Virus record (IMG/VR): IMGVR_UViG_3300046653_000093
Coordinates: 1 to 64,000 of that record
Reading direction: 5' to 3' (one strand)
DNA length: 64,000 bases
The position numbers were made by a program, and so were the translations under genes. Numbering within the stretch: the first letter of the stretch is position 1; every line of letters begins with the position of its first letter. Of the stretch, positions 2,810 through 27,857 are shown one piece after another. Below the pieces are notes generated by a model that saw nothing but the letters and a program-made list of their open reading frames with translations, made no database searches and was not told where the DNA came from.

Positions 2810-3222
2810 CAAGTTACTCCAACTTCTTTGAGATGCTGGACGCTATTGAAGCGAAGATGCAAGACCCACGTTGTAAGGAGGCTGGACTCACCCCTTACAC
2901 AGGGGAGCCTCTACTAACGAGTATGGATCTTGGGTGGATCGTTGCGCTTCCCCTAAGCGAACGGGACGAAACATTCCAGTTCAGTGTGAGTCTACGTCAG
3001 ATAAAGATTGACCGGCAAGATCCTAGATGGGCCGATGCTTATGCCAGGCTCCAATCATTTACGACCCACTTCATTACATGTCCAAAGCATGGGGTGGTTA
3101 AAGGCATCCCGATACACAAGCTTCAAGGCAAGAAAGAGGGATCTGAGACGCTGGTATGCATACCTTGTGTGGCTGAGCGCATGGTGAATCCTGTTCGAAC
3201 TTCAGCCAATCTCTCGATATGA
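2788..3222 (+). CDS. hypothetical cargo protein in IS607 (CxxH/CxxC Zn motif)
   Basis: ORF between cargo 1 and tnpB; ATGA overlap with tnpB. Confidence 0.6.
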   Translation: MVRKEPMTSYSNFFEMLDAIEAKMQDPRCKEAGLTPYTGEPLLTSMDLGWIVALPLSERDETFQFSVSLRQIKIDRQDPRWADAYARLQSFTTHFITCPKHGVVKGIPIHKLQGKKEGSETLVCIPCVAERMVNPVRTSANLSI

Positions 3223-4646
3223 AGAAATGTCGGTTCTTCATGCTGCATCCTGAGTGCAACCCTGGGAAGATTCAATCCCTGGAAGCTCTTCACGTCGAGT
3301 ACATAGCTTATGTCCGGATCTGCGTTCAGACGATGCTCAAAGCCCATAGGCTGACTTTGCCCCGCTCGGAGAAGCAGGACTTCTTCCCCAGGGCTGAGAA
3401 GCTTACGTCTCAGATTGAGAAAAACGCCCGCGACCATGCCATCCAGATTGTGAGCACTTGGGCTAAGTCGGTTTATGCCAGGAAGATCAAGACTTTCATC
3501 AGGTTATCTTTCAAAGAGGGGAACTTTGACGAGGACTTCTGTAAGCAGCTTTACACGGTGGGTAAGTACTTGATTCATGAGCCGAAGGAAACCGTGTCCC
3601 AGGAAGCAATTGATCTGTATTGGTCTTGGCTCTCTGACCCAGAAGTAGTGGGGAACCCGCCTTCCATATCCAGTCGGATTCCAATGAGGATGTCGGAGAA
3701 CACCTGCTCATTGGAAGACCCAGAAGAGGCTACCCACGCGGATCTTTGGCTCAAGATCTCAACTTTGATTTCTCGGAAGCTTGCTTGGCTACCACTGGTT
3801 GGGAACCCATACGTCAAGAAGTCATCTGACGTAAGTAAGGGAATCCACGCTAGAAAAGACCGAAAGGGCCGTTGGCGGTTCGAAGCCGTTGATACCAAAG
3901 AGTGGTTGGTCTGCGAGGCCGAACCTGACTTACCCAGGATTGGAGTCGATGTAGGACTAAACGTGGTAGCGGCTACTTCGAGCGGACACGTGTTTGGGGC
4001 CTACCTAAAACCCAAGTTCAACAGGCTCTACGACAAGGTCAGGGAAGTCAGGGCGAACCGCCAAAGGCAGGATCTCAAGGAGAACAGTCCTAGGCTAGAC
4101 CGACTAGAATCACGCCTCTCTGGCTTGACCAAGAGCTTCACGGGACGGGTATCCAATGAACTGATCCGAACGTACTCTGAGTCCGTCTTCGTCTTAGAAG
4201 ACCTAGATCTTCGTGGTTGTCGTGGGCAAAAACGCTTCTGTTACAGGGAATTAGCTCATGCCCTTGAATCAAAGGCTCCAACTGAAAAGGTGAATCCGGC
4301 CTACAGTTCTCAGACATGCCCTTCGTGTGGGCATGTCTCTAGATACAATCGGGCTGGAATAGATTTCATCTGTCGCCAGTGCGGCAGGATTTCACATGCC
4401 GACGTGGTAGGAGGGATCAATTTGCTCGGACGTTCCGAGAGCAAACAGATTGGCCTCGATGATCATCCGTCGGAAGTGAAGGGAGTGCTTGTGAGGCTAT
4501 ACTGGTCTAGGAGGAATCCGGATCAGGACTGTCCACAAGACTTCTTGAATAAATACGCGCCATTACCGTATGGCCGAAGGCTTACTACCAGGGGACTCTC
4601 TCGAAAGAGAAGCACTGGCATAGCTTTTAATCAGGTAGCTGCTTGA
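3219..4646 (+). CDS. tnpB: TnpB RNA-guided nuclease
   Basis: RuvC-I IGVDVGLN, RuvC-II VLEDL, Zn finger CPSC..CRQC, RuvC-III HADVVGGINL. Confidence 0.93.
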   Translation: MKKCRFFMLHPECNPGKIQSLEALHVEYIAYVRICVQTMLKAHRLTLPRSEKQDFFPRAEKLTSQIEKNARDHAIQIVSTWAKSVYARKIKTFIRLSFKEGNFDEDFCKQLYTVGKYLIHEPKETVSQEAIDLYWSWLSDPEVVGNPPSISSRIPMRMSENTCSLEDPEEATHADLWLKISTLISRKLAWLPLVGNPYVKKSSDVSKGIHARKDRKGRWRFEAVDTKEWLVCEAEPDLPRIGVDVGLNVVAATSSGHVFGAYLKPKFNRLYDKVREVRANRQRQDLKENSPRLDRLESRLSGLTKSFTGRVSNELIRTYSESVFVLEDLDLRGCRGQKRFCYRELAHALESKAPTEKVNPAYSSQTCPSCGHVSRYNRAGIDFICRQCGRISHADVVGGINLLGRSESKQIGLDDHPSEVKGVLVRLYWSRRNPDQDCPQDFLNKYAPLPYGRRLTTRGLSRKRSTGIAFNQVAA

Positions 4647-17942: not shown

Positions 17943-18656
17943 TTATTGCTTGACCAATCTGCAATCCATCAGTGGAACGCAATGCCCATCAGCATCGCAT
18001 TTATACACTCTACATAATACTCTATCTGGAGATTGTCCACAGCCACATCCACCAAAAACAGCAGTGGATTGTACCTGGTTATACCAATGGTTCTCTCTTG
18101 GATATTTAGGATCACACCTGGCTGGATAATAAGGGGATCTTCCGTCTTCAACAATTATTCCACCAGATGAGCCGCAACAATTACATTCTTTATCATAGGG
18201 CTTGCATGTTGTATCGCATCCACAATTACCATGGCAGCCACAATCTTTCTTAGCCTCTTCTTGTTTGCCACATCCACAACCTTCCTTTTTGCAAGAACGA
18301 TGCAGATTGGTATCGAAGATTCCTAACTGACCCCAATAGATGTTTGATAGATAGAATGCTTGCCCAGTTGGGCCAAAGCAATTCTTCTCAATATACACCA
18401 TACTCTCGCGAACGAAGATGACCACGTCCATCTCTGTTCGATTGGCAGTCTCCCGGAAGTCCCTCATGACCATCACTCGTTGTTGTAGCGCCCGGATGCT
18501 CTGCGGATAGCCAGGGTCCGCAGCGATGCGGAGGTCTAGATCCTGGCCTGTAATCGTTTCATTAATGTGCAACTGAATCTGTAGCCGATTCTGCACACTG
18601 GCTGAAAGATCGTTGTTGACCATGACAAGTGCCCCTGGCAATGCGATTGATCCCAT
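17943..18656 (-). CDS. hypothetical protein with Cys/Gly-rich C-terminus
   Basis: 237-aa ORF with CGC repeats. Confidence 0.65.
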   Translation of the reverse strand: MGSIALPGALVMVNNDLSASVQNRLQIQLHINETITGQDLDLRIAADPGYPQSIRALQQRVMVMRDFRETANRTEMDVVIFVRESMVYIEKNCFGPTGQAFYLSNIYWGQLGIFDTNLHRSCKKEGCGCGKQEEAKKDCGCHGNCGCDTTCKPYDKECNCCGSSGGIIVEDGRSPYYPARCDPKYPRENHWYNQVQSTAVFGGCGCGQSPDRVLCRVYKCDADGHCVPLMDCRLVKQ

Positions 18657-18715: not shown

Positions 18716-18827
18716 TTGACAGATAAAAATGATTCCGATATTCTGCAATAAGTAATTTGGTTCCAGTATAGCTGCAACGTCTGGAAAACTAAATTCATTT
18801 GACATCATCGCATACAGCTGATATCGT
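18716..18827 (+). promoter_or_regulatory. two tandem sigma70-type promoters
   Basis: TTGACA-17-TATTCT (18716-18744) and TTGACA-17-TATCGT (18799-18827). Confidence 0.65.
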
Positions 18828-18871
18828 CAGCCATATTTTATTGAATCAAAGTCCGTAACAAGGAGGTTTCC

Positions 18872-19555
18872 GTGCTGGGAAAATTCGGCAGTCTATTTTG
18901 GGAAAGCGACACGAAGGGATCTCCGGCAGAAAAGCCAGCGCCAGCTGCAAAGCCAGGAAAGCCAGTAGCAATCCCCGCCATTGATCCGGTAGTTGTTCCG
19001 GCTCGCGTGGCCCCGAAGCCCCAAATAACGATTCCTGGCCAAGTGGACGAAGCGATGGCCAAGATTCTGGAAGATGCAATCTTGGAAGCTAACATTCCTG
19101 GATTCGACTACGTCGAGTTCCGCGATGTTTTAGCCAACATGAGCACACTCGGGCTGCCAGAACCAAAGATGTTCCAGGCCGCATTCGCCTCGGCGCAGAT
19201 TGCCAAGGTAACCAAGACCCAACTGCTAGAAGCTATTGACTTCTACCTAAAGGTAATCGCTACGAAAGAGAAGGAATTCGAGGACTATGTGGCCGGTTTG
19301 AGGGCTACTGAGGTTACCGGCAAGGATCAGGAAATTGCCGACCTCGAAGCTCAGGTCGAAGCCGATGCCGCCAAGATTCAGGAATTGACTGCTGCAATCG
19401 GCGAGCGTAGACAGAAGCAAGACGCGATTCGCATGGGAAAAGCTCAAGCTGATTTGGACATCAACAACAAGACAGCTGCATTCGAAGCAACGAAGGCCGC
19501 TATTGTTGGCAGACTAAATTCTGATCGAAGCAAAATTGATACCTACATACAGTGA
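18872..19555 (+). CDS. coiled-coil hypothetical protein, first gene of the ABC/OmpA operon
   Basis: AGGAGG SD; ANIPGFDYVEF followed by coiled coil. Confidence 0.75.
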   Translation: MLGKFGSLFWESDTKGSPAEKPAPAAKPGKPVAIPAIDPVVVPARVAPKPQITIPGQVDEAMAKILEDAILEANIPGFDYVEFRDVLANMSTLGLPEPKMFQAAFASAQIAKVTKTQLLEAIDFYLKVIATKEKEFEDYVAGLRATEVTGKDQEIADLEAQVEADAAKIQELTAAIGERRQKQDAIRMGKAQADLDINNKTAAFEATKAAIVGRLNSDRSKIDTYIQ

Positions 19556-20604
19556 GCAAAATGGACACATCAAAAATCAAGAGTTTTTGGGATAAGCCTG
19601 AGGGCAATACCGGAATGATCGTACTCGGCACTCTTATTGTCGGTGGAGGAATATTTGTATTAAAAAACATAGATTTCCTCATTAGTCTTGCTCAGAATGC
19701 CATTTACTTCGGCTTTCTATTGGGTGTGATTGGTATTTCTGTTGCTGCTTTGATGAACCCAAGATTCCGGTTCTTGTGCAGTTCGATATTCCAATCAATC
19801 ATGCGCGGTATCACTAGTATCTGGATTGCTGTTGATGCAATTGGGATTCTCAAGAACTACTTGGTCGAAATGGTCAAGAAGCTGAAGATGATCGGTAACT
19901 ACATAACCCAGCTAGCCGGTCAAGTTGGTAAGGTCGGACGCGACATCGCGGCCCGCAAGAAAAAGGTTGAAGAATACATGCGCACAGCTGCTGCGGCGAA
20001 AAAGCGCAACGACATGGAAACCGCCAGCTTGCAGGGCACTTTCGCAGCACGTGAAATTGAATTCATTGAACGACGTCAAGCCAGTCTCGATAAGATGGAA
20101 AATACGCTTGAGATTCTCAAGCGAATGGAGGGCCGACTCAACATTCTGTACCAGGATACCGAGAACCAAGTACAGATGCTAACGGATGAGTACGAAGCCG
20201 TGAAGGCCTCTTACAAAGCCATGAAAGGTGCAGAGGCGCTCATCAATGGCGATGAAGCAAAAGCTCTCTTTGATCAAGCTTGTCAATATGTAACAGACGA
20301 CATTGGCATGAAACTTGGTGAGATGGATCGCTTCATGGAACAGGCCAAAGGCTCGTTGACTACCATGGATCTAAAGCAAGACGTGCTCAACGACAAGGGC
20401 CTGGAGCTGTTGTCTAACTGGGAAAAGACCGGCATTCTTAGCTACGAATCTGGCCAGCTTAGTCGGGTTGCCAAGGGCGAAAAGGTTCGAGTAGCTACCG
20501 ATGGCTCGCCATCAACTGATGAGCTCGAAGAGGCCGAAATGGCACAAGCTCGCGCTAATGGTGATCGTCCTAGTTCATTCTCAGCGATCTTCAATAAAAA
20601 GTAA
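19552..20604 (+). CDS. membrane-anchored coiled-coil protein (PspA-like)
   Basis: two N-terminal TM helices, then long heptad-rich helices. Confidence 0.65.
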   Translation: MSKMDTSKIKSFWDKPEGNTGMIVLGTLIVGGGIFVLKNIDFLISLAQNAIYFGFLLGVIGISVAALMNPRFRFLCSSIFQSIMRGITSIWIAVDAIGILKNYLVEMVKKLKMIGNYITQLAGQVGKVGRDIAARKKKVEEYMRTAAAAKKRNDMETASLQGTFAAREIEFIERRQASLDKMENTLEILKRMEGRLNILYQDTENQVQMLTDEYEAVKASYKAMKGAEALINGDEAKALFDQACQYVTDDIGMKLGEMDRFMEQAKGSLTTMDLKQDVLNDKGLELLSNWEKTGILSYESGQLSRVAKGEKVRVATDGSPSTDELEEAEMAQARANGDRPSSFSAIFNKK

Positions 20605-20649
20605 ATTCTCACGACCTAATGAACAACAAATCGACAGAGGATAATCAAA

Positions 20650-22218
20650 ATGGGCATGAAACCAGCTGGTAAAGCAGTAATTATGTTGGCGGTAGCGGGT
20701 GCTCTTATAGCCGCATTTCACTATCGAAGCGCAATCATTCCGGAAGGTAAAAAGGCCGAGGATGTAACTGGCCTCATGGCAAAGGGCGACTCAAGCGGCG
20801 ATATTGAAGGCTCAGGCAGCGGCATTCCCGCAGCCGCAGGCCCCAACAAATGTATCACGGTCGGTGTTGTAACCTGGCCCGGATACGCCGGTGGTGAATA
20901 TTGGAACAACGGCTTCGAAGACAACGAAGGCTCACGTTACCACAAGGACGGCATTTGCGTGAACTTCAAGCTCATGGATGACTTCGCGGCCTCACGCGCG
21001 GCGTTCCGTGGCAACAAGGTGGATCTCATGTGGTCCACTATCGATTCATTCCCAACCGAGTCAGGCGGCTTTGGCGAGAACGTTAGGTTCCTCTTTCAAG
21101 CTGACTGGTCACGTGGCGGTGACGCTATCGTGGTTCGAAAGGGCATCGGTTCAGTAGCTGATCTTTCCGGTAAAAAGATTGCGGTTGCCGAAGGTACGCC
21201 GAGCCATACCTTCCTGTTGTGGATGTTGGACATGGGCGGCCTTAGTATGATGGACGTCACCATCATCAAGCAGAATAGCGCTATTGATGCGGCCACTGCA
21301 TTCAAGTCTGGCAACGTCGATGCAGCCGTCGTCTGGTCTCCTGATGATTCAGACTGCGTCAAATCAGTTGCTGGGTCTTCAATTCTGATCAACACCAAAA
21401 AGGCCACTCACATCATTTCCGATGGCTTCTTCATCAAAGAGTCAACCTATCAACGACGCAAGCCGGAACTTGTCAAGTTGGTGCGTGGTTGGTTGCAGGG
21501 TGCAAAAGAAATCAATGAGTCTGCAGCTGCCAAAGCACAAGCGATCAAGATTCTGCAAACTCCGCCTCTCAAAGGAATTGAGCCCGATGCTATCGACAAC
21601 GTTCGCCTGACAACTTACGGCGACAACCTAGAGTTCTTTGGGCTTAACCCAGGCTACACAGGCGTAACCGGCAAGCAACTGTACGAAAAGATGACTACCG
21701 TTTATGGCAAGCTCAATCTCGCAACGAATCCTCTGCCATGGGACAAGATCGTCGATCTTGATTTCATCAAAGGTCTAGGCCTCGATGCGGCACAAGGTGG
21801 AGTTGCAGAGAAGAAAGCTACCTTCTCGGCCCCCACAGCGGCGATTGCACAGTCAAAGGCGATTGCCAGCAAGCCAGTCAGGGTTTCGTTTGCGAGCGGC
21901 AGCTCAGTGCTTGACGAGAATGCCAAGAGCCTCATCGAAGATCGCTTCGTTGAAGCGGCCAAAGCCTTCCCAGGCCAACACATTCGCGTCATTGGCAACA
22001 CGGATAACACCGGCAATGCAGCGGTCAATACTCGCATCAGCAAGGAGCGCGCACGAGCGGTGGTTGAGTATTTGGTGACTCAGCAAGGATTCGACCGCAA
22101 TCGATTCTCACCTTCGAATGGTGAGGGCGTGGGCCCGAGCAATCCGCTCTGCACCGATGATACACCTGCGTGTTTGGCAAAGAATCGAAGAACGGACTTC
22201 CAGATCCTAGAGAACTAA
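20650..22218 (+). CDS. NMT1/SsuA-type substrate-binding protein fused to an OmpA-like peptidoglycan-binding domain
   Basis: VVTWPGY, DWSRGGDAIV, DLSGKKIAV, VDAAVVWSPD; C-terminal FASGS, IGNTDNTG, SKERARAV, KNRRTDF. Confidence 0.88.
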   Translation: MGMKPAGKAVIMLAVAGALIAAFHYRSAIIPEGKKAEDVTGLMAKGDSSGDIEGSGSGIPAAAGPNKCITVGVVTWPGYAGGEYWNNGFEDNEGSRYHKDGICVNFKLMDDFAASRAAFRGNKVDLMWSTIDSFPTESGGFGENVRFLFQADWSRGGDAIVVRKGIGSVADLSGKKIAVAEGTPSHTFLLWMLDMGGLSMMDVTIIKQNSAIDAATAFKSGNVDAAVVWSPDDSDCVKSVAGSSILINTKKATHIISDGFFIKESTYQRRKPELVKLVRGWLQGAKEINESAAAKAQAIKILQTPPLKGIEPDAIDNVRLTTYGDNLEFFGLNPGYTGVTGKQLYEKMTTVYGKLNLATNPLPWDKIVDLDFIKGLGLDAAQGGVAEKKATFSAPTAAIAQSKAIASKPVRVSFASGSSVLDENAKSLIEDRFVEAAKAFPGQHIRVIGNTDNTGNAAVNTRISKERARAVVEYLVTQQGFDRNRFSPSNGEGVGPSNPLCTDDTPACLAKNRRTDFQILEN

Positions 22219-22223
22219 CCAAA

Positions 22224-23009
22224 ATGTCATCCCTCTTTGAAATACGAGGGACGCCGAGCCAGAGGATGTCAACAGCCTTGCAAGTTGCTGGCATCCTCGC
22301 TTTGCTGTCTCTTTGGGCTGGTATCTGCGCAACCGGCTTAGTCGGTCCGCGCCTCTTACCGTCACCGCTGGCGGTAATTCAGACCATTCCGGATTTGCAC
22401 TTCAAAGACGCAATGGTTCGGAACCTACTCTACTCGTGCTTTCTAAATCTCATGGGCTACGCAGAAGCGGTTGCCATCTGTCTGCCGCTCGGGTTCATAA
22501 TTGGAATGTTCCCGCTAACCCATGGAATGTTTAGCAAACCAGTTGATTCGATTCGGTACCTGCCACTGACAGCCTTGACTGGGCTCTTTATGGTTTGGTT
22601 CGGAATCGAAAACGCGATGAAGATCCAGTTCCTTGCGTTCGGGATCAGCGTCTACCTGTTACCTGTGGTTGTTCAACGTGTGCGAGAAGTTCCAACGCTG
22701 TATCAACAAACAGCTTTCACTTTGGGAGCATCCAAGTTTCAGATGTTCCAAACTGTATTCTGGCCACATGTCAGAAGTCGAATTATTCTAGACATCCAGG
22801 TACTAGTTGCTATAAGCTGGACTTACATCATCGTTGCGGAGATGATGAATAACACAGGCGGCATTGGTGGCATGCTCTACAGTTCTGCGAGAGCCGGACG
22901 TACCGATAAGACATTCGCACTGCTAGCCGTCATCATCTTGGTTGGCTACATCCAAGACAAGATATTCCTTGGGCTGGACATGCTCGTCAATCCACACAAA
23001 TACTCGTGA
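22224..23009 (+). CDS. ABC transporter permease (TauC/SsuC type)
   Basis: LLPSP, RYLP, AFTLGAS EAA loop, WTYIIVAEM. Confidence 0.9.
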   Translation: MSSLFEIRGTPSQRMSTALQVAGILALLSLWAGICATGLVGPRLLPSPLAVIQTIPDLHFKDAMVRNLLYSCFLNLMGYAEAVAICLPLGFIIGMFPLTHGMFSKPVDSIRYLPLTALTGLFMVWFGIENAMKIQFLAFGISVYLLPVVVQRVREVPTLYQQTAFTLGASKFQMFQTVFWPHVRSRIILDIQVLVAISWTYIIVAEMMNNTGGIGGMLYSSARAGRTDKTFALLAVIILVGYIQDKIFLGLDMLVNPHKYS

Positions 23010-23015
23010 GGTTAT

Positions 23016-23828
23016 ATGGCAGCTCAAGTTGTACAAATGGTGAATACTGAGCTTCCAGATATTCTGGAGCTGAGAAATATCCAGCAAATCTACAAAGACG
23101 CAGATGGAACAGATCACGTTGTCATCGATGGCTTGAATCTTCTCATTGAAGATTTACCAGGGAAAGGTGAGTTTGTTGTCATTCTCGGATCTTCAGGTTG
23201 TGGAAAGAGTCACATCCTTCGCTACCTGAGCGGGCTACAAACGCCAACATCCGGCGATGTTTTGATTGCTGGTCGTCCTCGATTATCAACAGACTACGTT
23301 GGTATGGTATTTCAGGCCTACTCTTCATTCGAGCATTACACCGTCTTGGAAAACGTTGCCCTCGGGTTGAAATATCGAGGCGTGCCCAAGAAGGACCGTG
23401 AAGCTAAGGCAATGGAGATGATCAAGAAAGTTGGTCTAGAAGGGCACGAGCACAAGTTCGCCAAAGCTCCTACACTCTCTGGAGGTCAACTGCAGCGCGT
23501 GGCGATTGCGCGCAGCCTCGCGTACGACAGCCGCATCTTGTTGATGGACGAGCCCTTTGGCGCACTCGATATCGAGACTCGTGGCAAGATGCAAGATCTA
23601 CTCGCTGCAATTTGGACAAGCATCGAACCAACAATCATCATGGTAACACATGCGATTGATGAGGCGGTGTATCTTGGTGATCGAATCTATGTTATGGGTG
23701 GTTCTCCAAGCAACATCATCAAAGAGTTCGTTTCTCCATTGCCGCTCGTGCGCAATCGGCAGATGAAACGCGATCCAGCATTCATTGACATGGTCCAAAA
23801 AATCGAAGACTTCATGATGTCTCTATGA
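23016..23828 (+). CDS. ABC transporter ATP-binding subunit (TauB/SsuB type)
   Basis: GSSGCGKS, LSGGQLQRVAIAR, LLMDEPFGALD, VTH. Confidence 0.95.
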   Translation: MAAQVVQMVNTELPDILELRNIQQIYKDADGTDHVVIDGLNLLIEDLPGKGEFVVILGSSGCGKSHILRYLSGLQTPTSGDVLIAGRPRLSTDYVGMVFQAYSSFEHYTVLENVALGLKYRGVPKKDREAKAMEMIKKVGLEGHEHKFAKAPTLSGGQLQRVAIARSLAYDSRILLMDEPFGALDIETRGKMQDLLAAIWTSIEPTIIMVTHAIDEAVYLGDRIYVMGGSPSNIIKEFVSPLPLVRNRQMKRDPAFIDMVQKIEDFMMSL

Positions 23829-23834
23829 GGCTAT

Positions 23835-25517
23835 GTGGGAAACAACGACATTCGTTACTATTTCGAAAATGTGAGAAACATACTCTTAAAAAAAATTGTT
23901 GACGACTGGGATCAAAATGGAGTATCTTTCATCGAAGCTTTAGAGGCAGTAGAACACCAATCGGCAGAAGAATGTCAATGTCCAGATTGCAGTGCTGAAA
24001 GGCTGCGGAACGCAAAAGTAGGCAAGAAAATTACTAAGCAATTGGCAGAAGGCTCGCCTGAAACAACCAACTCACCGACACCGAAATTAACACCAGAAAA
24101 ACAGAAAGAGACTGAAGAAATGGCAATGACGACAGCTGACCGGGAAAAGGCCGAACAAGATTTGGCTAAACTTCGAGATATTTCCATTGTGCGACAAGGC
24201 ACCAAGCTCGTAGTACCCGAGGGCATTGGATTGGATGTAGCCATCAAGGCTCTCACCCTCAAACAGCGTGAAGAAGAGCAGGAAGTTGGAATCAATATCA
24301 CCCTGCCTATCGAAGTGGCTGAGGGTATGGTTGGGTTCCTTCGCGTGCTTGAGCGCGAATACGGATTCGTCACCAATACTGGGCAGCAGTCGTTCTTTGG
24401 CAATCGCCCTCCAGAATACCTCGGCATCGAAACCACCCCAGGCCATCGCGAATCAATTCCGGTTGGCCGCCTCATGATCCCCGGTATTTCCGGATATCTC
24501 ACCCCAACATTCAACGTCCAAAAGAATCGCGTTGTGTTCCGGGTCGAGGGCGAGGTCAAAGGCAAGGACCGCCACGTCGTAGACAAGATCATGGCCATGG
24601 TGGAAGAGGAGTGCAAGAGAAACTCCATCTACAAGGGCCGAGCCATCATGACGGCCTTCCCCGTTGTCGAGGATTGCAGCTCATTGGAAGATACCTTCCT
24701 AACGTTTGCAAAGCTCAATCCGGTAAAGACAGAGGAGCTGATCTTCTCCAAGGAGACAGAAGACCAAATTACCGTTTCGCTCTTCGTACCAATCATGCAA
24801 ACAGAGGCTTGCCGCAAGAACAGCATTCCTCTCAAGCGCGGCATCTTGCTTGAAGGCCCCTACGGTACCGGCAAAACTCTAACCGCAGCTGCAACAGCAA
24901 ACCTGTGCGCACAAAACGGTTGGACCTTCATCTATCTGAAGGACGTCAAGCGCCTTGCGTATGCTTACGCATTCGCAGCACAGTATCAGCCTGCTGTGAT
25001 CTTCGCCGAAGACATTGATCAGATCATCAACGGCGACGATAGCGAGGATGAGATCAACGACATCCAAAATGCCATGGACGGCATTGATTCCAAGGGTGTT
25101 GAGGTCATCACAGTTCTCACCACGAACTTCCTCGAAAAGATCACTCGGGCCATGCTGCGCCCGGGTCGCCTTGACACCGTTGTCAGCGTTCGTGCACCTG
25201 ACCGGGAAGCTGCGGTTCGTCTTGTTCGCATGTACGCGCGGAGCGAAGGTAGGGATTTGCTGGATCCGAGCTGTGATCTGGAAAACTCCAACGTTGGCGA
25301 TATTCTTGCTGGCGAGATCCCTGCCATCATTCGCGAAGTTGTGGAGCGTTCAAAGCTTGCAGCGTTGCGGCGCAACAGTGGAGTGTTGACACTAACACCT
25401 GACGACATCGAGGTGACGGCCAAGAGCATGAAGGCTCACATGAACCTGCTCAAGACCCCAGAACCTGATGCTCGATCTGAGCGCGAGAAGGCAATATCTC
25501 TAATGTTAGGACAGTAA
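23835..25517 (+). CDS. AAA+ ATPase (start could be 24120; C-terminus possibly truncated)
   Basis: GILLEGPYGTGKT, IFAEDID, TTN, LRPGRLD. Confidence 0.9.
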   Translation: MGNNDIRYYFENVRNILLKKIVDDWDQNGVSFIEALEAVEHQSAEECQCPDCSAERLRNAKVGKKITKQLAEGSPETTNSPTPKLTPEKQKETEEMAMTTADREKAEQDLAKLRDISIVRQGTKLVVPEGIGLDVAIKALTLKQREEEQEVGINITLPIEVAEGMVGFLRVLEREYGFVTNTGQQSFFGNRPPEYLGIETTPGHRESIPVGRLMIPGISGYLTPTFNVQKNRVVFRVEGEVKGKDRHVVDKIMAMVEEECKRNSIYKGRAIMTAFPVVEDCSSLEDTFLTFAKLNPVKTEELIFSKETEDQITVSLFVPIMQTEACRKNSIPLKRGILLEGPYGTGKTLTAAATANLCAQNGWTFIYLKDVKRLAYAYAFAAQYQPAVIFAEDIDQIINGDDSEDEINDIQNAMDGIDSKGVEVITVLTTNFLEKITRAMLRPGRLDTVVSVRAPDREAAVRLVRMYARSEGRDLLDPSCDLENSNVGDILAGEIPAIIREVVERSKLAALRRNSGVLTLTPDDIEVTAKSMKAHMNLLKTPEPDARSEREKAISLMLGQ

Positions 25518-25867
25518 AAGGATCAGTTTCAAAACTCATGCTTGGTAAGTACAAAGAGCTTACCAATTTTGACTTAGTTTATGCTGCCGGTTTGTATGAC
25601 TACCTACCAGATAAAATTGCTACAGACATGACTACCTGGATGGTGGGAGCAACCAAGCCCGGCGGAATCACGCTGTTAACAAACTTCATAACCGGAACCC
25701 CAACTGATGGGTACATGGAAGCGTTCATGAATTGGCCGCTGATCTATCGGAACATAGATCAATTGGGAAATACTGCCAATGCAGTACGAGGCCAAGTATC
25801 TGCAACCAAAAGCTACTTTGACGATGATAATGTGATAGCTTTTATTGAGCTGCATAAACAGATTTAA
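25493..25867 (+). pseudogene. C-terminal fragment of a class I SAM methyltransferase
   Basis: FDLVYAAGLYDYL..KPGG..TNF; the glycine-rich motif I is absent; frame runs back into the ATPase tail. Confidence 0.65.
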
Positions 25868-25883
25868 CATTACTGGTGCAATT

Positions 25884-26610
25884 ATGAAAATACAAACCTT
25901 TTTGGTAACAACATTCATCTCATATATCGCCGCTGCAGCTGATCCAACTCCGGCAGCGCCACCAGAAGCGCCAATCCCAAGCTTCTTTCGATTCGATCAA
26001 GACTACATGCTTGGTACCCAAATCTGGGCTGGCGCAACATATCCATTGACGGATAAGCTTGGTATCTCCGCTGATATTTTTGTTCCAGAGAACTACCCAG
26101 GAATGAGTGCTGATTCAACCGGTGCTCCCAAGATCATCAATTCATGGTGGGGAGAATTTGATCTTGGCCCCGCATTGACGCTTGGCCCGGTTACATTGAC
26201 TCCGATGGCAGGCATAGCATTTGATTGGGCTGCGAAACGAGCGGTGGCCCTCAATGCACCACAGCTCTACACCATAGTCAATCTCGATAAGATCATGGAT
26301 TTGGGTTATCCTGTACTCCCCATTCAAGGATGCAGTGCTCAGTGATTTCATTCACACGCGCGATTGGGTTTTGTATAAGGCCACCAAGGTAATGAGCGTT
26401 GGTCCCCAATTCGAGTACTCATACAACCTCAACAACAAATTATTGGGAGCGAAAGGAACAACAGCCGCTCCATTGGGTGGTCACGTTGAGTTGGCATTCG
26501 GCTCAGGCAACTCGCTTGGACTGTTCCTCGGTTATGATCTATCAAAGACAGTGCGTGACAGAAGTAACGGGGCTGCAGAAGGTCGTTTGACTTTCGTTCA
26601 CAACTTCTGA
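25884..26610 (+). pseudogene. frameshifted outer-membrane beta-barrel-like protein
   Basis: signal peptide, amphipathic strands, C-terminal Phe (RLTFVHNF); frame change near 26295. Confidence 0.65.
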
Positions 26611-26882
26611 TGGCAGAATGAAAAACCTACCTCTGAAACGTGGGGATTTGGTGCGCATGTCCCGGGCCCACAAAGAAGCATTGAAGGCCAACCATTGCAG
26701 TCCTCACGTGCGCGAGTTCGGTCGATGCATTGGAGTAGTTCAGGGTCCTGTGGATTGGGGTAATGGATCCTTTGGTCCAGAGGTTGATGTGCGCTGGAAA
26801 CCATCGCACTTGCGCTACATGTACTCTCAGGAAGATTTAGTTGTCGTGAAGAGAAGTTGAAGTAAACAACAGGAGAAGAAAA

Positions 26883-27722
26883 ATGATATCTAAATGGTTA
26901 ACAGTTCTGGCACTGTTTGTAATTTCATGTGGGGCAACACATGAGGGGTCTTCAGAAAACCAAAGTCTAGGTGAAGTCAAGGCAAACATATTGATTGCTG
27001 CTGGGGTTGACATCTCTCAGATTACATACACGCTAGCTTGCACGCCAACTCCAGTACCTAGTCAAGTGGCCACTGGTACCTGGCAAGTAGCTGTGGATGC
27101 GAATGGTAGAGCGAAAGTAAACGGCTCCATTGGCGGTCTTGATCCGAGCAGCACGTGTACCCTTGTGCTTTCAGGTCAGGACACATGGGGGCTCAACAAT
27201 GGCAATATCCAGAATTGCAGAGGGGAGGCTGATGGAGTGCAACCCGCTAGTGGGGCAATCCAAATGAACATGGTCTGCACTGACAACAATGTTGTTGGCC
27301 CAAATTCAGGGAGCATTACGGCTGACATCACGGTACGACAAGGTACCCCTTATCAGTGCAGCGGGATTGCGTGGTATCGCAGTTCAGAGTACATGTCGCC
27401 GATCCAATATGTTGGTGACGCCTTCGCTCTAGATATGGCGGTTACTGTCCCAACCTCGCCACAGACTGTAACGTGGACCAGCAACGATGGTGCCGCCTAC
27501 TGGTATCAAGGATCCATTTACTCAAATGTATTCACCTTGACCGGCAACCCTGCGACGGACCCAGCTACATCTGGGAATCCAGCTCAGGTAATGTACTGCT
27601 ACACGAGTGGTCAATTTACGATTACCTTGACAGTGCAGGATCTAACTCCTGGGCTGTTGATCAACGGGCAGCCTGGACTTTGCCCAGCTTTCAGCAACAC
27701 ATTCCAAATTGGGTGCTACTGA
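26883..27722 (+). CDS. putative lipoprotein, Thr/Gly/Cys-rich beta protein
   Basis: AGGAG SD; lipobox-like LFVISC. Confidence 0.7.
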   Translation: MISKWLTVLALFVISCGATHEGSSENQSLGEVKANILIAAGVDISQITYTLACTPTPVPSQVATGTWQVAVDANGRAKVNGSIGGLDPSSTCTLVLSGQDTWGLNNGNIQNCRGEADGVQPASGAIQMNMVCTDNNVVGPNSGSITADITVRQGTPYQCSGIAWYRSSEYMSPIQYVGDAFALDMAVTVPTSPQTVTWTSNDGAAYWYQGSIYSNVFTLTGNPATDPATSGNPAQVMYCYTSGQFTITLTVQDLTPGLLINGQPGLCPAFSNTFQIGCY

Positions 27723-27821
27723 TTGTAATTCAACTGTCACTGTAATTCAAATTAGTGGGTTGACTCGCGTTGACGAAGCGCTAGGATAGCGCTCTCACAC
27801 TGAGGATTCGGTTCCCACCTC

Positions 27822-27857
27822 GAAGGGCCTGGACTTGTTTCAGGCCCTTTCTTTTTC
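27822..27857 (+). terminator. intrinsic terminator
   Basis: AAGGGCCTGGA / TTCAGGCCCTT hairpin followed by a T tract. Confidence 0.75.

What the first reader, a model, noticed from the sequence alone, without database searches (positions are those of the whole stretch)
18716..25517. Complete PspA-like / SBP-OmpA / ABC transporter operon plus AAA+ ATPase in a phage
Seen: two tandem TTGACA promoters drive a coiled-coil protein, a TM-anchored PspA-like protein, a substrate-binding protein fused to an OmpA domain, a permease, an ABC ATPase and an AAA+ ATPase. The block looks more GC-rich than its flanks. Inference: the pairing of a wall-tethered binding protein with PspA-like coiled coils suggests an envelope-stress or membrane-sealing machine (superinfection exclusion or lysis delay), not only a nutrient importer.
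Basis: partly seen in the sequence, partly recalled or inferred. Interest (0 to 1): 0.6.

Follow-up and report, generated by a model that had tools for sequence, protein, structure and literature searches.

The report
PspA-like membrane module with ABC transporter
A 392-kb phage carries a five-gene envelope module of a type already catalogued in bacteria (coiled-coil protein, membrane-anchored PspA/ESCRT-III-like protein, wall-tethered binding protein, ABC permease and ATPase), here followed by an AAA+ ATPase; the module is conserved in many huge phages, including the Lak megaphages, and its function is untested.

Summary
Six co-oriented, tightly packed genes lie at 18872-25517, behind the two best sigma-70-like sites of the region. 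The block is GC-rich (0.499 against 0.430 for the genome, top 0.5 % of windows).

The second gene encodes a two-TM hairpin plus a divergent PspA/IM30/ESCRT-III domain. The evidence:
- Sub-threshold Pfam hits, which recur in 47 of 120 relatives.
- hhalign E-value 1.7e-4.
- Foldseek top 12 matches are all Vipp1 or PspA.
- E. coli PspA at Z 13.3.

The host record is a 391,957-bp IMG/VR virus.

The order coiled-coil, TM-PspA-like, SBP::OmpA, permease, ATPase is conserved in Lak megaphages, in the 735-kb phage LR756501 and in 31 of 36 informative IMG/VR loci. It also occurs in Bacteroidota chromosomes, where the core is o1-o2, with or without SBP::OmpA and with or without the transporter.

The AAA+ gene is not an orthologous part of the module; its relatives sit in N4-like phages. 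However, other AAA+ subfamilies flank the module in other lineages.

This operon type was described by comparative genomics in bacteria (Ravi et al. 2024). PspA next to ABC transporters in huge phages was noted in an October 2026 preprint.

Verdict: real, a new member of a known kind, function untested. A superinfection-exclusion or lysis-delay role is unsupported.

The parts
18716..18744 (+). sigma-70-like promoter candidate 1 (TTGACA, 17 nt, TATTCT)
   Evidence: 10 of 12 consensus positions; sequence read. This is a consensus match only. The host's promoter type is unknown.
18799..18827 (+). sigma-70-like promoter candidate 2 (TTGACA, 17 nt, TATCGT, with TG before the -10)
   Evidence: 10 of 12 consensus positions. 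It lies 45 nt upstream of the o1 start. The Shine-Dalgarno sequence AAGGAGG sits just before GTG 18872.
18872..19555 (+). o1: 227-aa coiled-coil partner protein with no TM segment. The N-terminus is disordered and Pro/Ala-rich, residues 60-110 form a small helical domain, and residues 115-225 form a long helix.
   Evidence: AF2 mean pLDDT 80. No Pfam, PHROG or PDB family. 31 homologues, all unnamed and from metagenomes, on contigs of up to 463 kb. An o1 HMM hit lies directly upstream of o2 in 27 of 43 viral and 63 of 77 bacterial loci. Its stop overlaps the o2 start (GTGA), which suggests translational coupling.
19552..20604 (+). o2: 350-aa membrane-anchored PspA/IM30/ESCRT-III-like protein. 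It has a conserved N-terminal motif, a two-TM hairpin at about 22-60, a PspA-like domain at about 93-293 and a C-terminal tail.
   Evidence: PF04012 E 0.028, residues 93-222 matching profile 21-150. 47 of 120 relatives hit PF04012, best E 7.3e-8. hhalign against three canonical PspA sequences: E 1.7e-4, probability 50 %. Foldseek top 12 are all Vipp1 or PspA, best E 8.4e-4. VIA top match is E. coli PspA 4whe, Z 13.3, rmsd 2.8 A over 122 residues. The family has 914 representative clusters.
20650..22218 (+). o3: 522-aa binding protein. It has an N-terminal signal-anchor (5-23), a linker, an NMT1/SsuA/TauA-type substrate-binding domain (about 66-400) and an OmpA-like peptidoglycan-binding domain (403-520).
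   Evidence: Pfam OmpA 52.6 bits and NMT1 33.1 bits. SsuA_fam E 6e-21. The nearest solved chains are SsuA-type binding proteins and YiaD/OmpA C-domains. The motifs GNTDNTG (449) and NTRISKERARAV (460) are present. phrog_25518 matches over the full length, E 1.7e-51.
22170..23009 (+). o4: ABC importer permease of the TauC/SsuC type. The likely true start is ATG 22224, just after the o3 stop.
   Evidence: BPD_transp_1 33.4 bits, cut-off 26.4. SaoP, TauC and SsuC models E 2e-28 to 1e-18. Five hydrophobic segments above the threshold.
23016..23828 (+). o5: ABC ATPase of the TauB/SsuB/NrtD type
   Evidence: ABC_tran E 1.9e-27. TauB model E 5.5e-53. Walker A GSSGCGKS, signature LSGGQ, Walker B LLMDEP and H-loop VTHA can be read in the translation.
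23835..25517 (+). o6: 560-aa classical-clade AAA+ ATPase with its own N-terminal domain (about 113-330). It is co-transcribed here but is not an orthologous part of the conserved module.
   Evidence: AAA E 7.3e-15. CDC48, PAN and FtsH models. VAT/p97 chains E 1e-30. phrog_10440 E 4e-113. Homologues lie in N4-like podophages, PhiW-14, LR756511 and LR756500, but not in Lak or LR756501. There is a 6-nt gap after o5.
25538..27850 (+). Rest of the GC-rich, co-oriented island. It holds a small ORF (25538-25867), two outer-membrane-protein-like ORFs in different frames (25884-26345 and 26335-26610), a lipoprotein-like ORF (26883-27722) and a terminator-like hairpin (27822-27850). Whether these belong to the module is uncertain.
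   Evidence: GC per ORF 0.43-0.50. No Pfam hits. The signal-peptide-like and lipobox features and the C-terminal ...FVHNF are read from the translations. The only strong terminator-like site in the region has a 12-pair stem. None of these ORFs is found next to the module in the other 43 viral loci.

Best explanation
The block is a bacterial-type envelope module carried by a huge phage.

Shown:
- o2 is an inner-membrane protein: a two-TM hairpin followed by a divergent PspA/IM30/ESCRT-III-like domain.
- o1 is its near-constant coiled-coil neighbour.
- o3 is a SsuA/TauA-type solute-binding domain fused to an OmpA-like domain that keeps the peptidoglycan-binding motifs.
- o4 and o5 are the permease and ATPase of a type I ABC importer of the nitrate/sulfonate/taurine family.
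- The five genes travel together across deeply diverged huge phages and in Bacteroidota chromosomes.

Inferred:
- Both termini of the hairpin, and so the PspA-like domain, face the cytoplasm.
- The PspA-like domain polymerises on the cytoplasmic face of the membrane, with o1 as co-polymer or regulator, to stabilise or remodel it.
- o3 is held at the inner membrane by its N-terminal anchor and tied to the wall by its OmpA-like domain.
- o3 senses or delivers a small solute to the o4/o5 transporter.
- In the phage, the module keeps the host's inner membrane intact and energised, and brings in a solute, during the long infection cycle of a very large phage.
- The adjacent AAA+ ATPase may act as a facultative remodeller of the polymer, by analogy with Vps4 and ESCRT-III. 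This is the weakest step.
For: Identity of the parts.

o2 as PspA-like:
- PF04012 is by far the commonest Pfam hit among 120 relatives (47 members, best E 7.3e-8; the next family has 12).
- The register is the same in Pfam (93-222 to 21-150), hhalign (97-232 to 24-152, E 1.7e-4) and structure (92-213 to PspA 18-142, Z 13.3).
- Foldseek ranks 1-12 are all Vipp1 or PspA.
- The family's conserved D-P at positions 95-96 aligns with the invariant E-D-P of canonical PspA.

Linkage:
- The order o1-o2-o3-o4-o5 is found in LR756501 and Lak-B7.
- Permease and ATPase lie downstream on the same strand in 31 of 36 viral loci; SBP and OmpA in 30 of 36.
- Loci with only about 30 % o2 identity keep the coiled-coil ORF, o2, an OmpA-ended protein of about 560 aa, the permease and the ATPase.
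- In bacteria, o1 lies upstream of o2 in 63 of 77 loci.
- The full operon sits in a housekeeping context in Tenacibaculum xiamenense.
- Flavilitoribacter nigricans has o1-o2-SBP::OmpA next to holA and trp genes.

Age in phages: 35 of 38 viral o2 rows form one clade (SH-aLRT 99) apart from the Bacteroidota rows.

AAA+: three different AAA+ subfamilies abut the module in three lineages.

Literature: the same component set, including an AAA+, was reported for bacteria by Ravi et al. 2024 (PMC11237479).
Against: - No experiment exists for any member.
- o2 itself is below the Pfam cut-off (14.5-15.8 bits against 33.9).
- hhalign against E. coli PspA alone gives a probability of only 2.4 %.
- Long helical hairpins attract many middling structural matches. 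Unrelated coiled coils score Z 11-12 just below PspA.
- The solute is unknown.
- In bacteria most o1-o2 pairs lack the transporter (45 of 63). Some have SBP::OmpA without permease or ATPase. Transport may therefore be secondary.
- The o1-o2 complex prediction gave no verdict.
- No RNA run was listed, so expression is unshown.
- o6 orthologues occur widely without the module, and the closest relatives of this cassette lack an AAA+.
Confidence: 0.5

Rival explanations
1. Sensor or tether model. The SBP::OmpA protein is mainly a wall-tethered periplasmic sensor or anchor that controls, or positions, the PspA-like polymer across the membrane, in the way PspB/C act for PspA. The ABC permease and ATPase serve signalling or mechanotransduction rather than net nutrient uptake.
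For: - In bacteria SBP::OmpA is linked to o1-o2 more often (24-27 of 63 loci) than the permease and ATPase are (18 of 63).
- Flavilitoribacter nigricans has o1-o2-SBP::OmpA directly followed by holA and trp genes, with no transporter.
- RsoM2USA has a coiled-coil gene, an o2 homologue and an NMT1-type binding protein nearby.
- o3 is doubly tethered, by an N-terminal anchor and an OmpA domain. That is odd for a freely diffusing receptor.
Against: - The permease and ATPase are ordinary type I importer parts with intact motifs, and in phages they are almost always present (31 of 36).
- Missing transporter genes in bacteria could lie elsewhere in the genome.
- No interaction data exist.
Confidence: 0.2
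2. Plain auxiliary metabolic gene. The transporter simply imports a sulfur or nitrogen source (sulfonate, taurine, nitrate or a similar solute) for phage replication, and o1, o2 and o6 are functionally unrelated neighbours.
For: - The nearest characterised families are SsuA/TauA, TauC/SsuC and TauB.
- Phage-borne binding proteins and ABC genes are annotated as auxiliary genes (phrog_293).
- Bacillus phage G has the permease, the ATPase and two SBP::OmpA genes, with no o2-family hit within 7 kb.
Against: - Linkage of o2 with the transporter survives down to 25-30 % o2 identity across 31 of 36 viral loci, and it recurs in bacteria.
- Genes are tightly spaced or overlapping.
- The OmpA fusion is not needed for a nutrient receptor.
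Confidence: 0.12
3. Conflict role. The module repairs or seals the membrane against pore-forming abortive-infection effectors or superinfecting phages, or delays lysis.
For: There is only the analogy with the established membrane-sealing role of PspA and ESCRT-III (established knowledge; also summarised in the preprint read). The module is enriched in its complete form in phages (86 % of viral loci against 29 % of bacterial loci).
Against: - No defence or anti-defence genes were identified beside it, although PADLOC was not run.
- The same module sits in housekeeping contexts in bacteria.
- Nothing links it to holins or lysis genes.
Confidence: 0.1
4. Artefact. The GC-rich island is a bacterial fragment mis-assembled into the phage contig.
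For: GC is 0.07 above the genome mean. Homologues exist in bacterial genomes.
Against: - An independent IMG/VR contig (L007, 215,808 bp) has the same island with the same flanks at 99-100 % identity.
- The closest relatives are on other viral contigs of 435-512 kb.
- The viral o2 sequences form their own clade.
Confidence: 0.03

Closest known systems
[quoted passage not shown]
   Same: The component list is the same: a membrane-anchored PspA/ESCRT-III-like protein, an SBP fused to OmpA, a permease, an ABC ATPase and a terminal AAA+ ATPase. That work was also inference from genomic context only.
   Different: - The published example has the order PspA, PBPB+OmpA, TM(s), ABC-ATPase, TM+Snf7, inactive-AAA+AAA. 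It has two ESCRT-III-like genes and a two-domain AAA+.
- Here one coiled-coil gene and one TM-PspA-like gene precede the transporter.
- The AAA+ here has a single AAA domain with a different N-domain.
- The host here is a phage.
- Whether o2 belongs to the same family as OGG56892.1 could not be tested.
PspA genes of huge phages next to membrane-associated genes (Yuan & Chen, bioRxiv 10.64898/2026.10.24.761521)
   Same: The theme is the same. PspA is encoded by phages of more than 200 kb, and 15 of 189 pspA loci lie beside complete ABC transporters (SBP, ATPase, permease). SPFH neighbours are also reported, as in locus L037 here.
   Different: - Their PspA set required confirmation by Pfam PF04012. 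o2 scores E 0.028, so it would probably be missed.
- In the parts of the preprint read and searched here, no TM hairpin, o1 partner, OmpA fusion or presence of the module in Lak, LR756501 or RsoM2USA was found.
- Their supplementary tables could not be read.
Classical Psp and Lia systems (E. coli PspFABC; B. subtilis LiaIH)
   Same: The effector has the PspA hairpin fold and is held at the membrane. LiaI anchors LiaH, and PspB/C recruit PspA (established knowledge; summarised in PMC11237479).
   Different: - Here the anchor is fused to the effector as an N-terminal TM hairpin.
- No operon product matched a PspB, PspC, PspF or LiaI-type Pfam model.
- Canonical PspA scores 121-146 bits on PF04012, against 15-25 bits for o2-family proteins.
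ESCRT-III with Vps4 (CdvB/CdvC in archaea)
   Same: An ESCRT-III-superfamily protein is encoded beside a classical-clade AAA+ ATPase. o6 matches CdvC, CDC48 and PAN models.
   Different: - o6 shows no Pfam MIT domain. Its N-domain resembles the N-domains of BCS1/TRIP13-type AAA+ proteins.
- Its Walker B reads ED instead of DE.
- The pairing is not conserved.
SsuABC and TauABC sulfonate and taurine importers (NitT/TauT family)
   Same: The best-scoring characterised relatives of the binding domain, the permease and the ATPase belong here.
   Different: - All scores are far below the equivalog cut-offs (for example SsuA_fam 74.9 against 163.5 bits, and TauB 180 against 357 bits).
- The binding protein carries a membrane anchor and an OmpA domain.
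- The substrate is unknown.

Membership tests
PspA/IM30/ESCRT-III superfamily (o2) | Match to Pfam PF04012 (PspA_IM30) above the gathering score of 33.9 bits | tested here: not met
   o2 scores 14.5 bits, E 0.028, and 15.8 bits in the genome scan. 47 of 120 relatives hit at E <= 0.1, best 7.3e-8. Bacterial paralogues score 19.5-24.5 bits, against 121-146 bits for canonical PspA. This is remote homology, not family membership in the Pfam sense.
PspA/IM30/ESCRT-III superfamily (o2) | Alpha1-alpha2 helical hairpin followed by further helices (the ESCRT-III core fold) | tested here: met
   AF2 model with pLDDT 90-97 over residues 110-200. Foldseek ranks 1-12 are Vipp1 or PspA, followed by CHMP1B and CHMP2A-CHMP3. 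VIA top match is PspA 4whe, Z 13.3, rmsd 2.8 A over 122 residues. Caveat: generic coiled-coil hairpins score Z 11-12.
PspA/IM30/ESCRT-III superfamily (o2) | Profile-profile similarity to canonical PspA in a consistent register, including the E-D-P motif at the start of helix 1 | tested here: inconclusive
   hhalign of A2 against three canonical PspA sequences: E 1.7e-4, probability 49.8 %, residues 97-232 to 24-152. Against E. coli PspA alone the probability is 2.4 %. The family consensus IDPIG aligns with the invariant EDP of PspA. This phage's own protein has VDAIG, with Ala in place of Pro.
PspA/IM30/ESCRT-III superfamily (o2) | Self-assembly into rings or rods and membrane binding or remodelling | not testable with these tools
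   Needs purified protein, liposomes and electron microscopy.
Type I ABC importer, nitrate/sulfonate/taurine (NitT/TauT) family (o3-o5) | ATPase with Walker A, Q-loop region, LSGGQ signature, Walker B and H-loop | tested here: met
   ABC_tran 96.9 bits. The motifs GSSGCGKS, LSGGQ, LLMDEP and VTHA can be read in the translation.
Type I ABC importer, nitrate/sulfonate/taurine (NitT/TauT) family (o3-o5) | BPD_transp_1 permease and a family-matched periplasmic binding domain | tested here: met
   BPD_transp_1 33.4 bits (cut-off 26.4) and NMT1 33.1 bits (cut-off 20.5). The nearest NCBIfam models are SaoP, TauC and SsuC, and SsuA_fam and TauA, all below the equivalog cut-offs.
Type I ABC importer, nitrate/sulfonate/taurine (NitT/TauT) family (o3-o5) | Demonstrated substrate and direction of transport | not testable with these tools
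   No ligand can be assigned from sequence. No equivalog model is reached.
OmpA-like peptidoglycan-binding domain (C-terminus of o3) | Pfam OmpA above the cut-off, plus the conserved Asp and Arg of the T-D-x-x-G and N-x-x-L/I-S-x-x-R-A-x-x-V motifs that contact the peptide stem | tested here: met
   OmpA 52.6 bits (cut-off 27.2). GNTDNTG lies at 449 and NTRISKERARAV at 460. The role of these residues is established knowledge from the OmpA and Pal structures; binding itself was not tested.
TM-PspA/Snf7 + PBPB-OmpA + ABC + AAA+ operon type of Ravi et al. 2024 | Co-directional cluster holding a membrane-anchored PspA/Snf7-like gene, a PBPB+OmpA gene, a permease and an ABC ATPase | tested here: met
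   for the window.
TM-PspA/Snf7 + PBPB-OmpA + ABC + AAA+ operon type of Ravi et al. 2024 | Terminal AAA+ protein with an inactive N-terminal AAA domain plus an active classical AAA domain | tested here: inconclusive
   o6 has one recognisable AAA domain, 311-546. Its N-domain, 113-330, resembles the N-domains of other phage and bacterial AAA+ proteins and of BCS1/TRIP13-type proteins in the Atlas. It was not folded here. The Tenacibaculum operon ends in a different, 631-aa AAA+.
ESCRT-III/Vps4 pair | Vps4-type AAA+ with an N-terminal MIT domain that binds a C-terminal MIM of the ESCRT-III protein | tested here: not met
   No MIT family appears among the Pfam hits of o6 at E <= 0.01. No MIM was recognised in the o2 tail by eye. 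The pairing is not conserved.
Classical Psp regulon (PspF, PspB, PspC) | Presence of PspB/PspC membrane partners or the PspF activator | tested here: not met
   None of the operon products matches these Pfam families. The rest of the genome was not searched for them.

The most novel reading that the evidence does not exclude
Huge phages carry a minimal, self-contained ESCRT-like machine. It consists of a membrane-anchored ESCRT-III/PspA-like polymer, a coiled-coil partner, a wall-tethered periplasmic sensor with an ABC engine and, in some lineages, a recruited AAA+ disassemblase. The phage uses it actively to reshape or repair the host inner membrane. Possible uses are building membrane structures for replication or assembly of very large virions, or resealing pores made by abortive-infection effectors. 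On this reading the module is more than passive stress relief combined with nutrient uptake.
Probability: 0.1. Interest if true: 0.85.

Novelty: new member of a known kind. Interest (0 to 1): 0.5.

Why it matters
The module is one of the few multi-gene envelope systems shared by very different huge phages: Lak megaphages of Prevotella, the 735-kb LR756501, many IMG/VR contigs of 200-500 kb and, in part, Ralstonia phage RsoM2USA and Bacillus phage G. It is also present in free-living Bacteroidota.

It couples an ESCRT-III-superfamily protein to a wall-tethered binding protein and an ABC engine. No member has been studied experimentally.

Two kinds of tractable carrier exist, so the open question of what these TM-anchored PspA-like proteins do becomes directly testable:
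- the culturable phages RsoM2USA and phage G, each carrying part of the module;
- isolates with the chromosomal version: Tenacibaculum xiamenense, Flavilitoribacter nigricans DSM 23189 and Xanthocytophaga flavus.

The finding also shows that Pfam-thresholded surveys of phage PspA probably miss a family of at least 914 sequence clusters.

Tried and rejected
- Megablast of the block against GenBank phages: no match. The relatives are protein-level only.
It worked with 15 closer sequences.
- Sequence search of o1 and o2 against PDB chains: only insignificant coiled-coil hits.
- o1 fold searches (Foldseek on PDB, VIA wide): generic coiled coils only, best Z 7.3. The Atlas search by features gave only unnamed Bacteroidota clusters. 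o1 as a second PspA is rejected for lack of any signal.
- Atlas fold search with the o2 model: no hit.
- Complex prediction of o2 (70-350) with o1 (56-227): no verdict, score 0.00. This is not evidence either way.
- The look-up of sequencing runs for RNA: none was listed. Read laying was therefore not used, and expression and operon structure remain unshown.
- Terminase_6N (PF03237) in the genome: no hit. phrog_2 did hit.
- o6 as an orthologous module component: rejected.
- hhalign of the o2 family against E. coli PspA alone: weak, probability 2.4 %.
- Reading o6 as 'inactive AAA + AAA': not supported by the available data.
- Not done: a PADLOC scan, a search of the metagenome-contig collection, a host prediction, and a look-up of OGG56892.1 (no tool fetches it by accession).

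Full report
**1. The observation**

The window is positions 157445-221444 of a 391,957-bp IMG/VR virus record, with CheckV completeness 91 %. The record holds a terminase-large-subunit-like ORF (phrog_2, E 4.2e-14). The window itself holds PhoH, an NMNAT/Nudix enzyme and a transposase.

Between 18872 and 25517 six ORFs lie head to tail on the + strand:

| Gene | Coordinates | Size | Assignment |
|---|---|---|---|
| o1 | 18872-19555 | 227 aa | coiled-coil protein, no family |
| o2 | 19552-20604 | 350 aa | TM hairpin plus PspA-like domain |
| o3 | 20650-22218 | 522 aa | NMT1/SsuA-type binding domain plus OmpA domain |
| o4 | 22170 or 22224 to 23009 | 279 or 261 aa | BPD_transp_1 permease |
| o5 | 23016-23828 | 270 aa | ABC_tran ATPase |
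| o6 | 23835-25517 | 560 aa | AAA+ ATPase |

- Pfam and NCBIfam confirm the assignments for o3 to o6.
- The stop of o1 overlaps the start of o2 (GTGA). The o5-o6 gap is 6 nt.
Each matches 10 of 12 positions and they are the best in the 10-kb region scanned. The overall count of promoter-like sites there is no higher than in shuffles. The host's promoter type is unknown.
- GC of the block is 0.499 against 0.430 for the genome. Only 0.5 % of equal-sized windows reach it.
- The GC-rich, co-oriented stretch continues to a strong terminator-like hairpin at 27822-27850.

**2. What the first two proteins are**

*o2.* It has two hydrophobic helices at about residues 22-60, followed by a long helical hairpin.

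- Alone it scores only E 0.028 on Pfam PspA_IM30 (residues 93-222 to profile 21-150), well under the gathering score.
- Three further lines agree on the same register:
  - (a) Of 120 relatives scanned one by one, 47 hit PspA_IM30 (best E 7.3e-8). The next most frequent family has 12.
  - (b) hhalign of the family against three canonical PspA sequences (E. coli, Tenacibaculum, Xanthocytophaga) gives E 1.7e-4 and probability 50 %, with residues 97-232 matching 24-152. The family's conserved D-P lies on the invariant E-D-P of PspA.
  - (c) The AF2 model (mean pLDDT 76.5, and 90-97 over the hairpin) finds Vipp1 or PspA at Foldseek ranks 1-12, followed by CHMP1B and CHMP2A-CHMP3. E. coli PspA is the top VIA match (Z 13.3, rmsd 2.8 A, 122 residues).
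- Caveats:
  - Helical hairpins collect many Z 11-12 matches.
  - hhalign against a single PspA sequence is weak.
- I take o2 to be a membrane-anchored, divergent member of the PspA/IM30/ESCRT-III superfamily, with confidence of about 0.85.

*o1.* It has a disordered Pro/Ala-rich N-terminus, a small helical domain and a helix of about 110 residues. It shows no PspA signal and matches no specific fold. It is a coiled-coil partner of unknown family.

**3. Is the cluster a unit?**

*Known phage genomes.* tblastn and HMM searches show the same order, o1-o2-SBP::OmpA-permease-ATPase, in the 735-kb phage LR756501 and in the Prevotella Lak megaphages.

- Bacillus phage G has a permease, an ATPase and two SBP::OmpA genes (gp243, 245, 249, 250).
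- Ralstonia phage RsoM2USA has a coiled-coil gene (gp55), an o2 homologue (gp54) and an NMT1-type binding protein (gp52).

*IMG/VR.* A scan returned 44 loci with an o2 homologue, 15 of them on contigs of more than 200 kb.

- Among the 36 loci with at least 6 kb downstream, 31 have a permease and an ATPase on the same strand within 8 kb. Thirty have the binding and OmpA parts.
- An o1 HMM hit lies directly upstream in 27 of 43 loci.
- Loci with only about 30 % o2 identity still show a coiled-coil ORF, o2, a protein of about 560 aa ending in OmpA, a permease-sized ORF and an ATPase. One of them has an SPFH gene as well.

**4. Bacterial origin**

The o2 family has 914 representative clusters. It gave at least 567 hits in species-representative bacterial genomes. 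These are mostly Saprospiraceae and other Bacteroidota, including isolates (Tenacibaculum xiamenense, Flavilitoribacter nigricans DSM 23189, Xanthocytophaga flavus) and 8-Mb chromosomes.

In the 80 loci kept there is a hierarchy of linkage:

| Feature beside o2 | Bacterial loci |
|---|---|
| o1 directly upstream | 63 of 77 |
| SBP::OmpA downstream | 24-27 of 63 |
| permease plus ATPase downstream | 18 of 63 |
| AAA+ at the 3' end | 3 of 63 |

- Tenacibaculum has the full operon plus a 631-aa AAA+ (AAA with AAA_lid_6) in a housekeeping context that includes a ClC channel and an AraC regulator.
- Flavilitoribacter has only o1-o2-SBP::OmpA, followed by holA and trpEGDCF.
- In a quick maximum-likelihood tree of o2, 35 of 38 viral rows form one group (SH-aLRT 99). 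The group also holds two Fibrobacterota MAG contigs and stands apart from the Bacteroidota rows. Viral branches are long and the root is arbitrary. I therefore claim only that the phage copies are not many recent, independent captures.

**5. The AAA+ gene**

- o6 is a classical-clade AAA+. It matches CDC48, PAN, FtsH and CdvC models, and VAT/p97 chains at E 1e-30.
- Its N-domain resembles those of other phage and bacterial AAA+ proteins and of BCS1/TRIP13-type proteins.
- Its orthologues (phrog_10440, E 4e-113) sit in N4-like podophages, Delftia phage PhiW-14 and two other huge phages. They are absent from Lak and LR756501.
- The nearest relatives of this cassette have no AAA+ after the ATPase.
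- Other AAA+ subfamilies do abut the module elsewhere. A phrog_3757-like gene lies directly upstream of o1 in viral loci L017-L019. A phrog_4339-like gene follows the ATPase in three Flavobacteriia-type loci.
- The published bacterial example also ends in an AAA+.

Recurrent recruitment of non-orthologous AAA+ genes is a hint of a functional link. I put the chance that o6 works with the module at about 0.35.

**6. Mechanism**

*Shown:* the domain identities, the hydrophobic segments, the intact ATPase motifs, the OmpA peptidoglycan-binding motifs (GNTDNTG at 449 and NTRISKERARAV at 460) and the conserved linkage.

*Inferred:*
- Both termini of the o2 hairpin, and so its PspA-like domain, face the cytoplasm.
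- o2 polymerises on the cytoplasmic face of the inner membrane, with o1 as co-polymer or regulator.
- o3, anchored in the membrane and tied to the wall, senses or delivers a small solute to o4/o5.
- In a huge phage, the module sustains membrane integrity and energisation, and imports a solute, during a long infection.

*Rivals:*
- A sensor or tether model. This is favoured by the tighter linkage of SBP::OmpA than of the transporter to o1-o2 in bacteria.
- A plain nutrient importer with unrelated neighbours.
- A conflict role (resealing pores, exclusion, lysis timing).
- Mis-assembly. This is made unlikely by an independent contig with the same island and flanks (L007).

*What gave nothing:* the o1-o2 complex prediction gave no verdict, and no RNA run was listed.

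**7. Comparison with what is known**

- Ravi et al. [quoted passage not shown] Their example is OGG56892.1 from Candidatus Handelsmanbacteria. They proposed a link between membrane remodelling and solute transport. The window's operon has the same parts in a different order, with one ESCRT-III-like gene instead of two and a different AAA+.
- Yuan & Chen (bioRxiv, October 2026) found Pfam-confirmed PspA in 184 huge phages. Fifteen of those loci lie next to complete ABC transporters. o2 would probably fall below their threshold.
- In the parts of that preprint read and searched here, the TM hairpin, the o1 partner, the OmpA fusion and the presence in Lak, LR756501 and RsoM2USA were not found.
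- The jumbo-phage survey of Iyer et al. 2021 has no occurrence of 'OmpA', 'Snf7', 'ESCRT', 'ABC transporter' or 'solute-binding'.
- No experimental study of any member was found in the papers searched.

**8. Verdict**

This is a real, conserved module and a new (phage-borne) member of a kind already recognised by comparative genomics. Its function is untested.

Interest is 0.5. It is not surprising to a specialist who knows the 2024 survey. Its breadth in megaphages, the size of the unnamed o2 family and the availability of culturable carriers make the question testable.

Noticed in passing
window 25884-26345 and 26335-26610: Two overlapping ORFs lie in different frames. The first has a signal-peptide-like N-terminus. 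The second ends in ...RLTFVHNF, like the C-terminal signal of outer-membrane barrels. They may be one split or frameshifted outer-membrane protein. The same arrangement is present at 99 % identity in the independent contig L007. Neither has a Pfam hit.
   Followed up: partly
window 26883-27722: A 279-aa ORF has a lipoprotein-like N-terminus (...LFVISC) and no Pfam or PHROG hit. It is the last gene of the GC-rich island before the terminator-like hairpin at 27822-27850.
   Followed up: no
window 23835-25517 (o6): The Walker B box reads VIFAEDID, with E-D where classical AAA+ proteins have D-E. No aromatic-hydrophobic-Gly pore loop is evident in the alignment to VAT. The ATPase may be slow or non-canonical.
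   Followed up: no
L062:13476-15371 (Tenacibaculum xiamenense); also L097 and L100: The bacterial version of the operon ends in a 631-aa AAA+ protein (AAA with AAA_lid_6, phrog_4339-like). It sits in the same position as o6 but belongs to a different subfamily.
   Followed up: yes
L063:8113-11670 (Flavilitoribacter nigricans DSM 23189): Only o1-o2-SBP::OmpA is present, directly followed by holA and trpEGDCF. The binding protein can therefore accompany the PspA-like pair without a dedicated permease or ATPase nearby.
   Followed up: yes
L017:6568-7962, L018:5408-6823, L019:5803-7218: In three viral loci a phrog_3757-like AAA+ gene lies directly upstream of o1 on the same strand. It is only 24 % identical to o6.
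   Followed up: yes
L037:15200-16054: An SPFH/Band 7 gene lies inside a distant viral version of the module. This fits the PspA-SPFH association reported for huge phages.
   Followed up: no
L004 (Ralstonia phage RsoM2USA gp55, gp54, gp52): This cultured 344-kb phage has a coiled-coil gene, an o2 homologue and an NMT1_3 binding protein close together, all annotated as hypothetical. It is a possible experimental system.
   Followed up: partly
window 3219-4646: A transposase-like ORF (phrog_12300 and phrog_506, E 1e-22) lies in another GC-rich patch (0.51) of the phage genome.
   Followed up: no
window 17943-18656 (- strand): A 237-aa ORF with a Cys-rich C-terminal half (CGC, CxC and CC repeats) has no Pfam or PHROG hit. 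It is divergently oriented from the module's promoter region.
   Followed up: no
L078 and L085 (Fibrobacterota MAG contigs of 74 and 58 kb): Their o2 copies fall inside the viral clade and carry the full cassette. These contigs may be mis-binned phage fragments or prophages.
   Followed up: no
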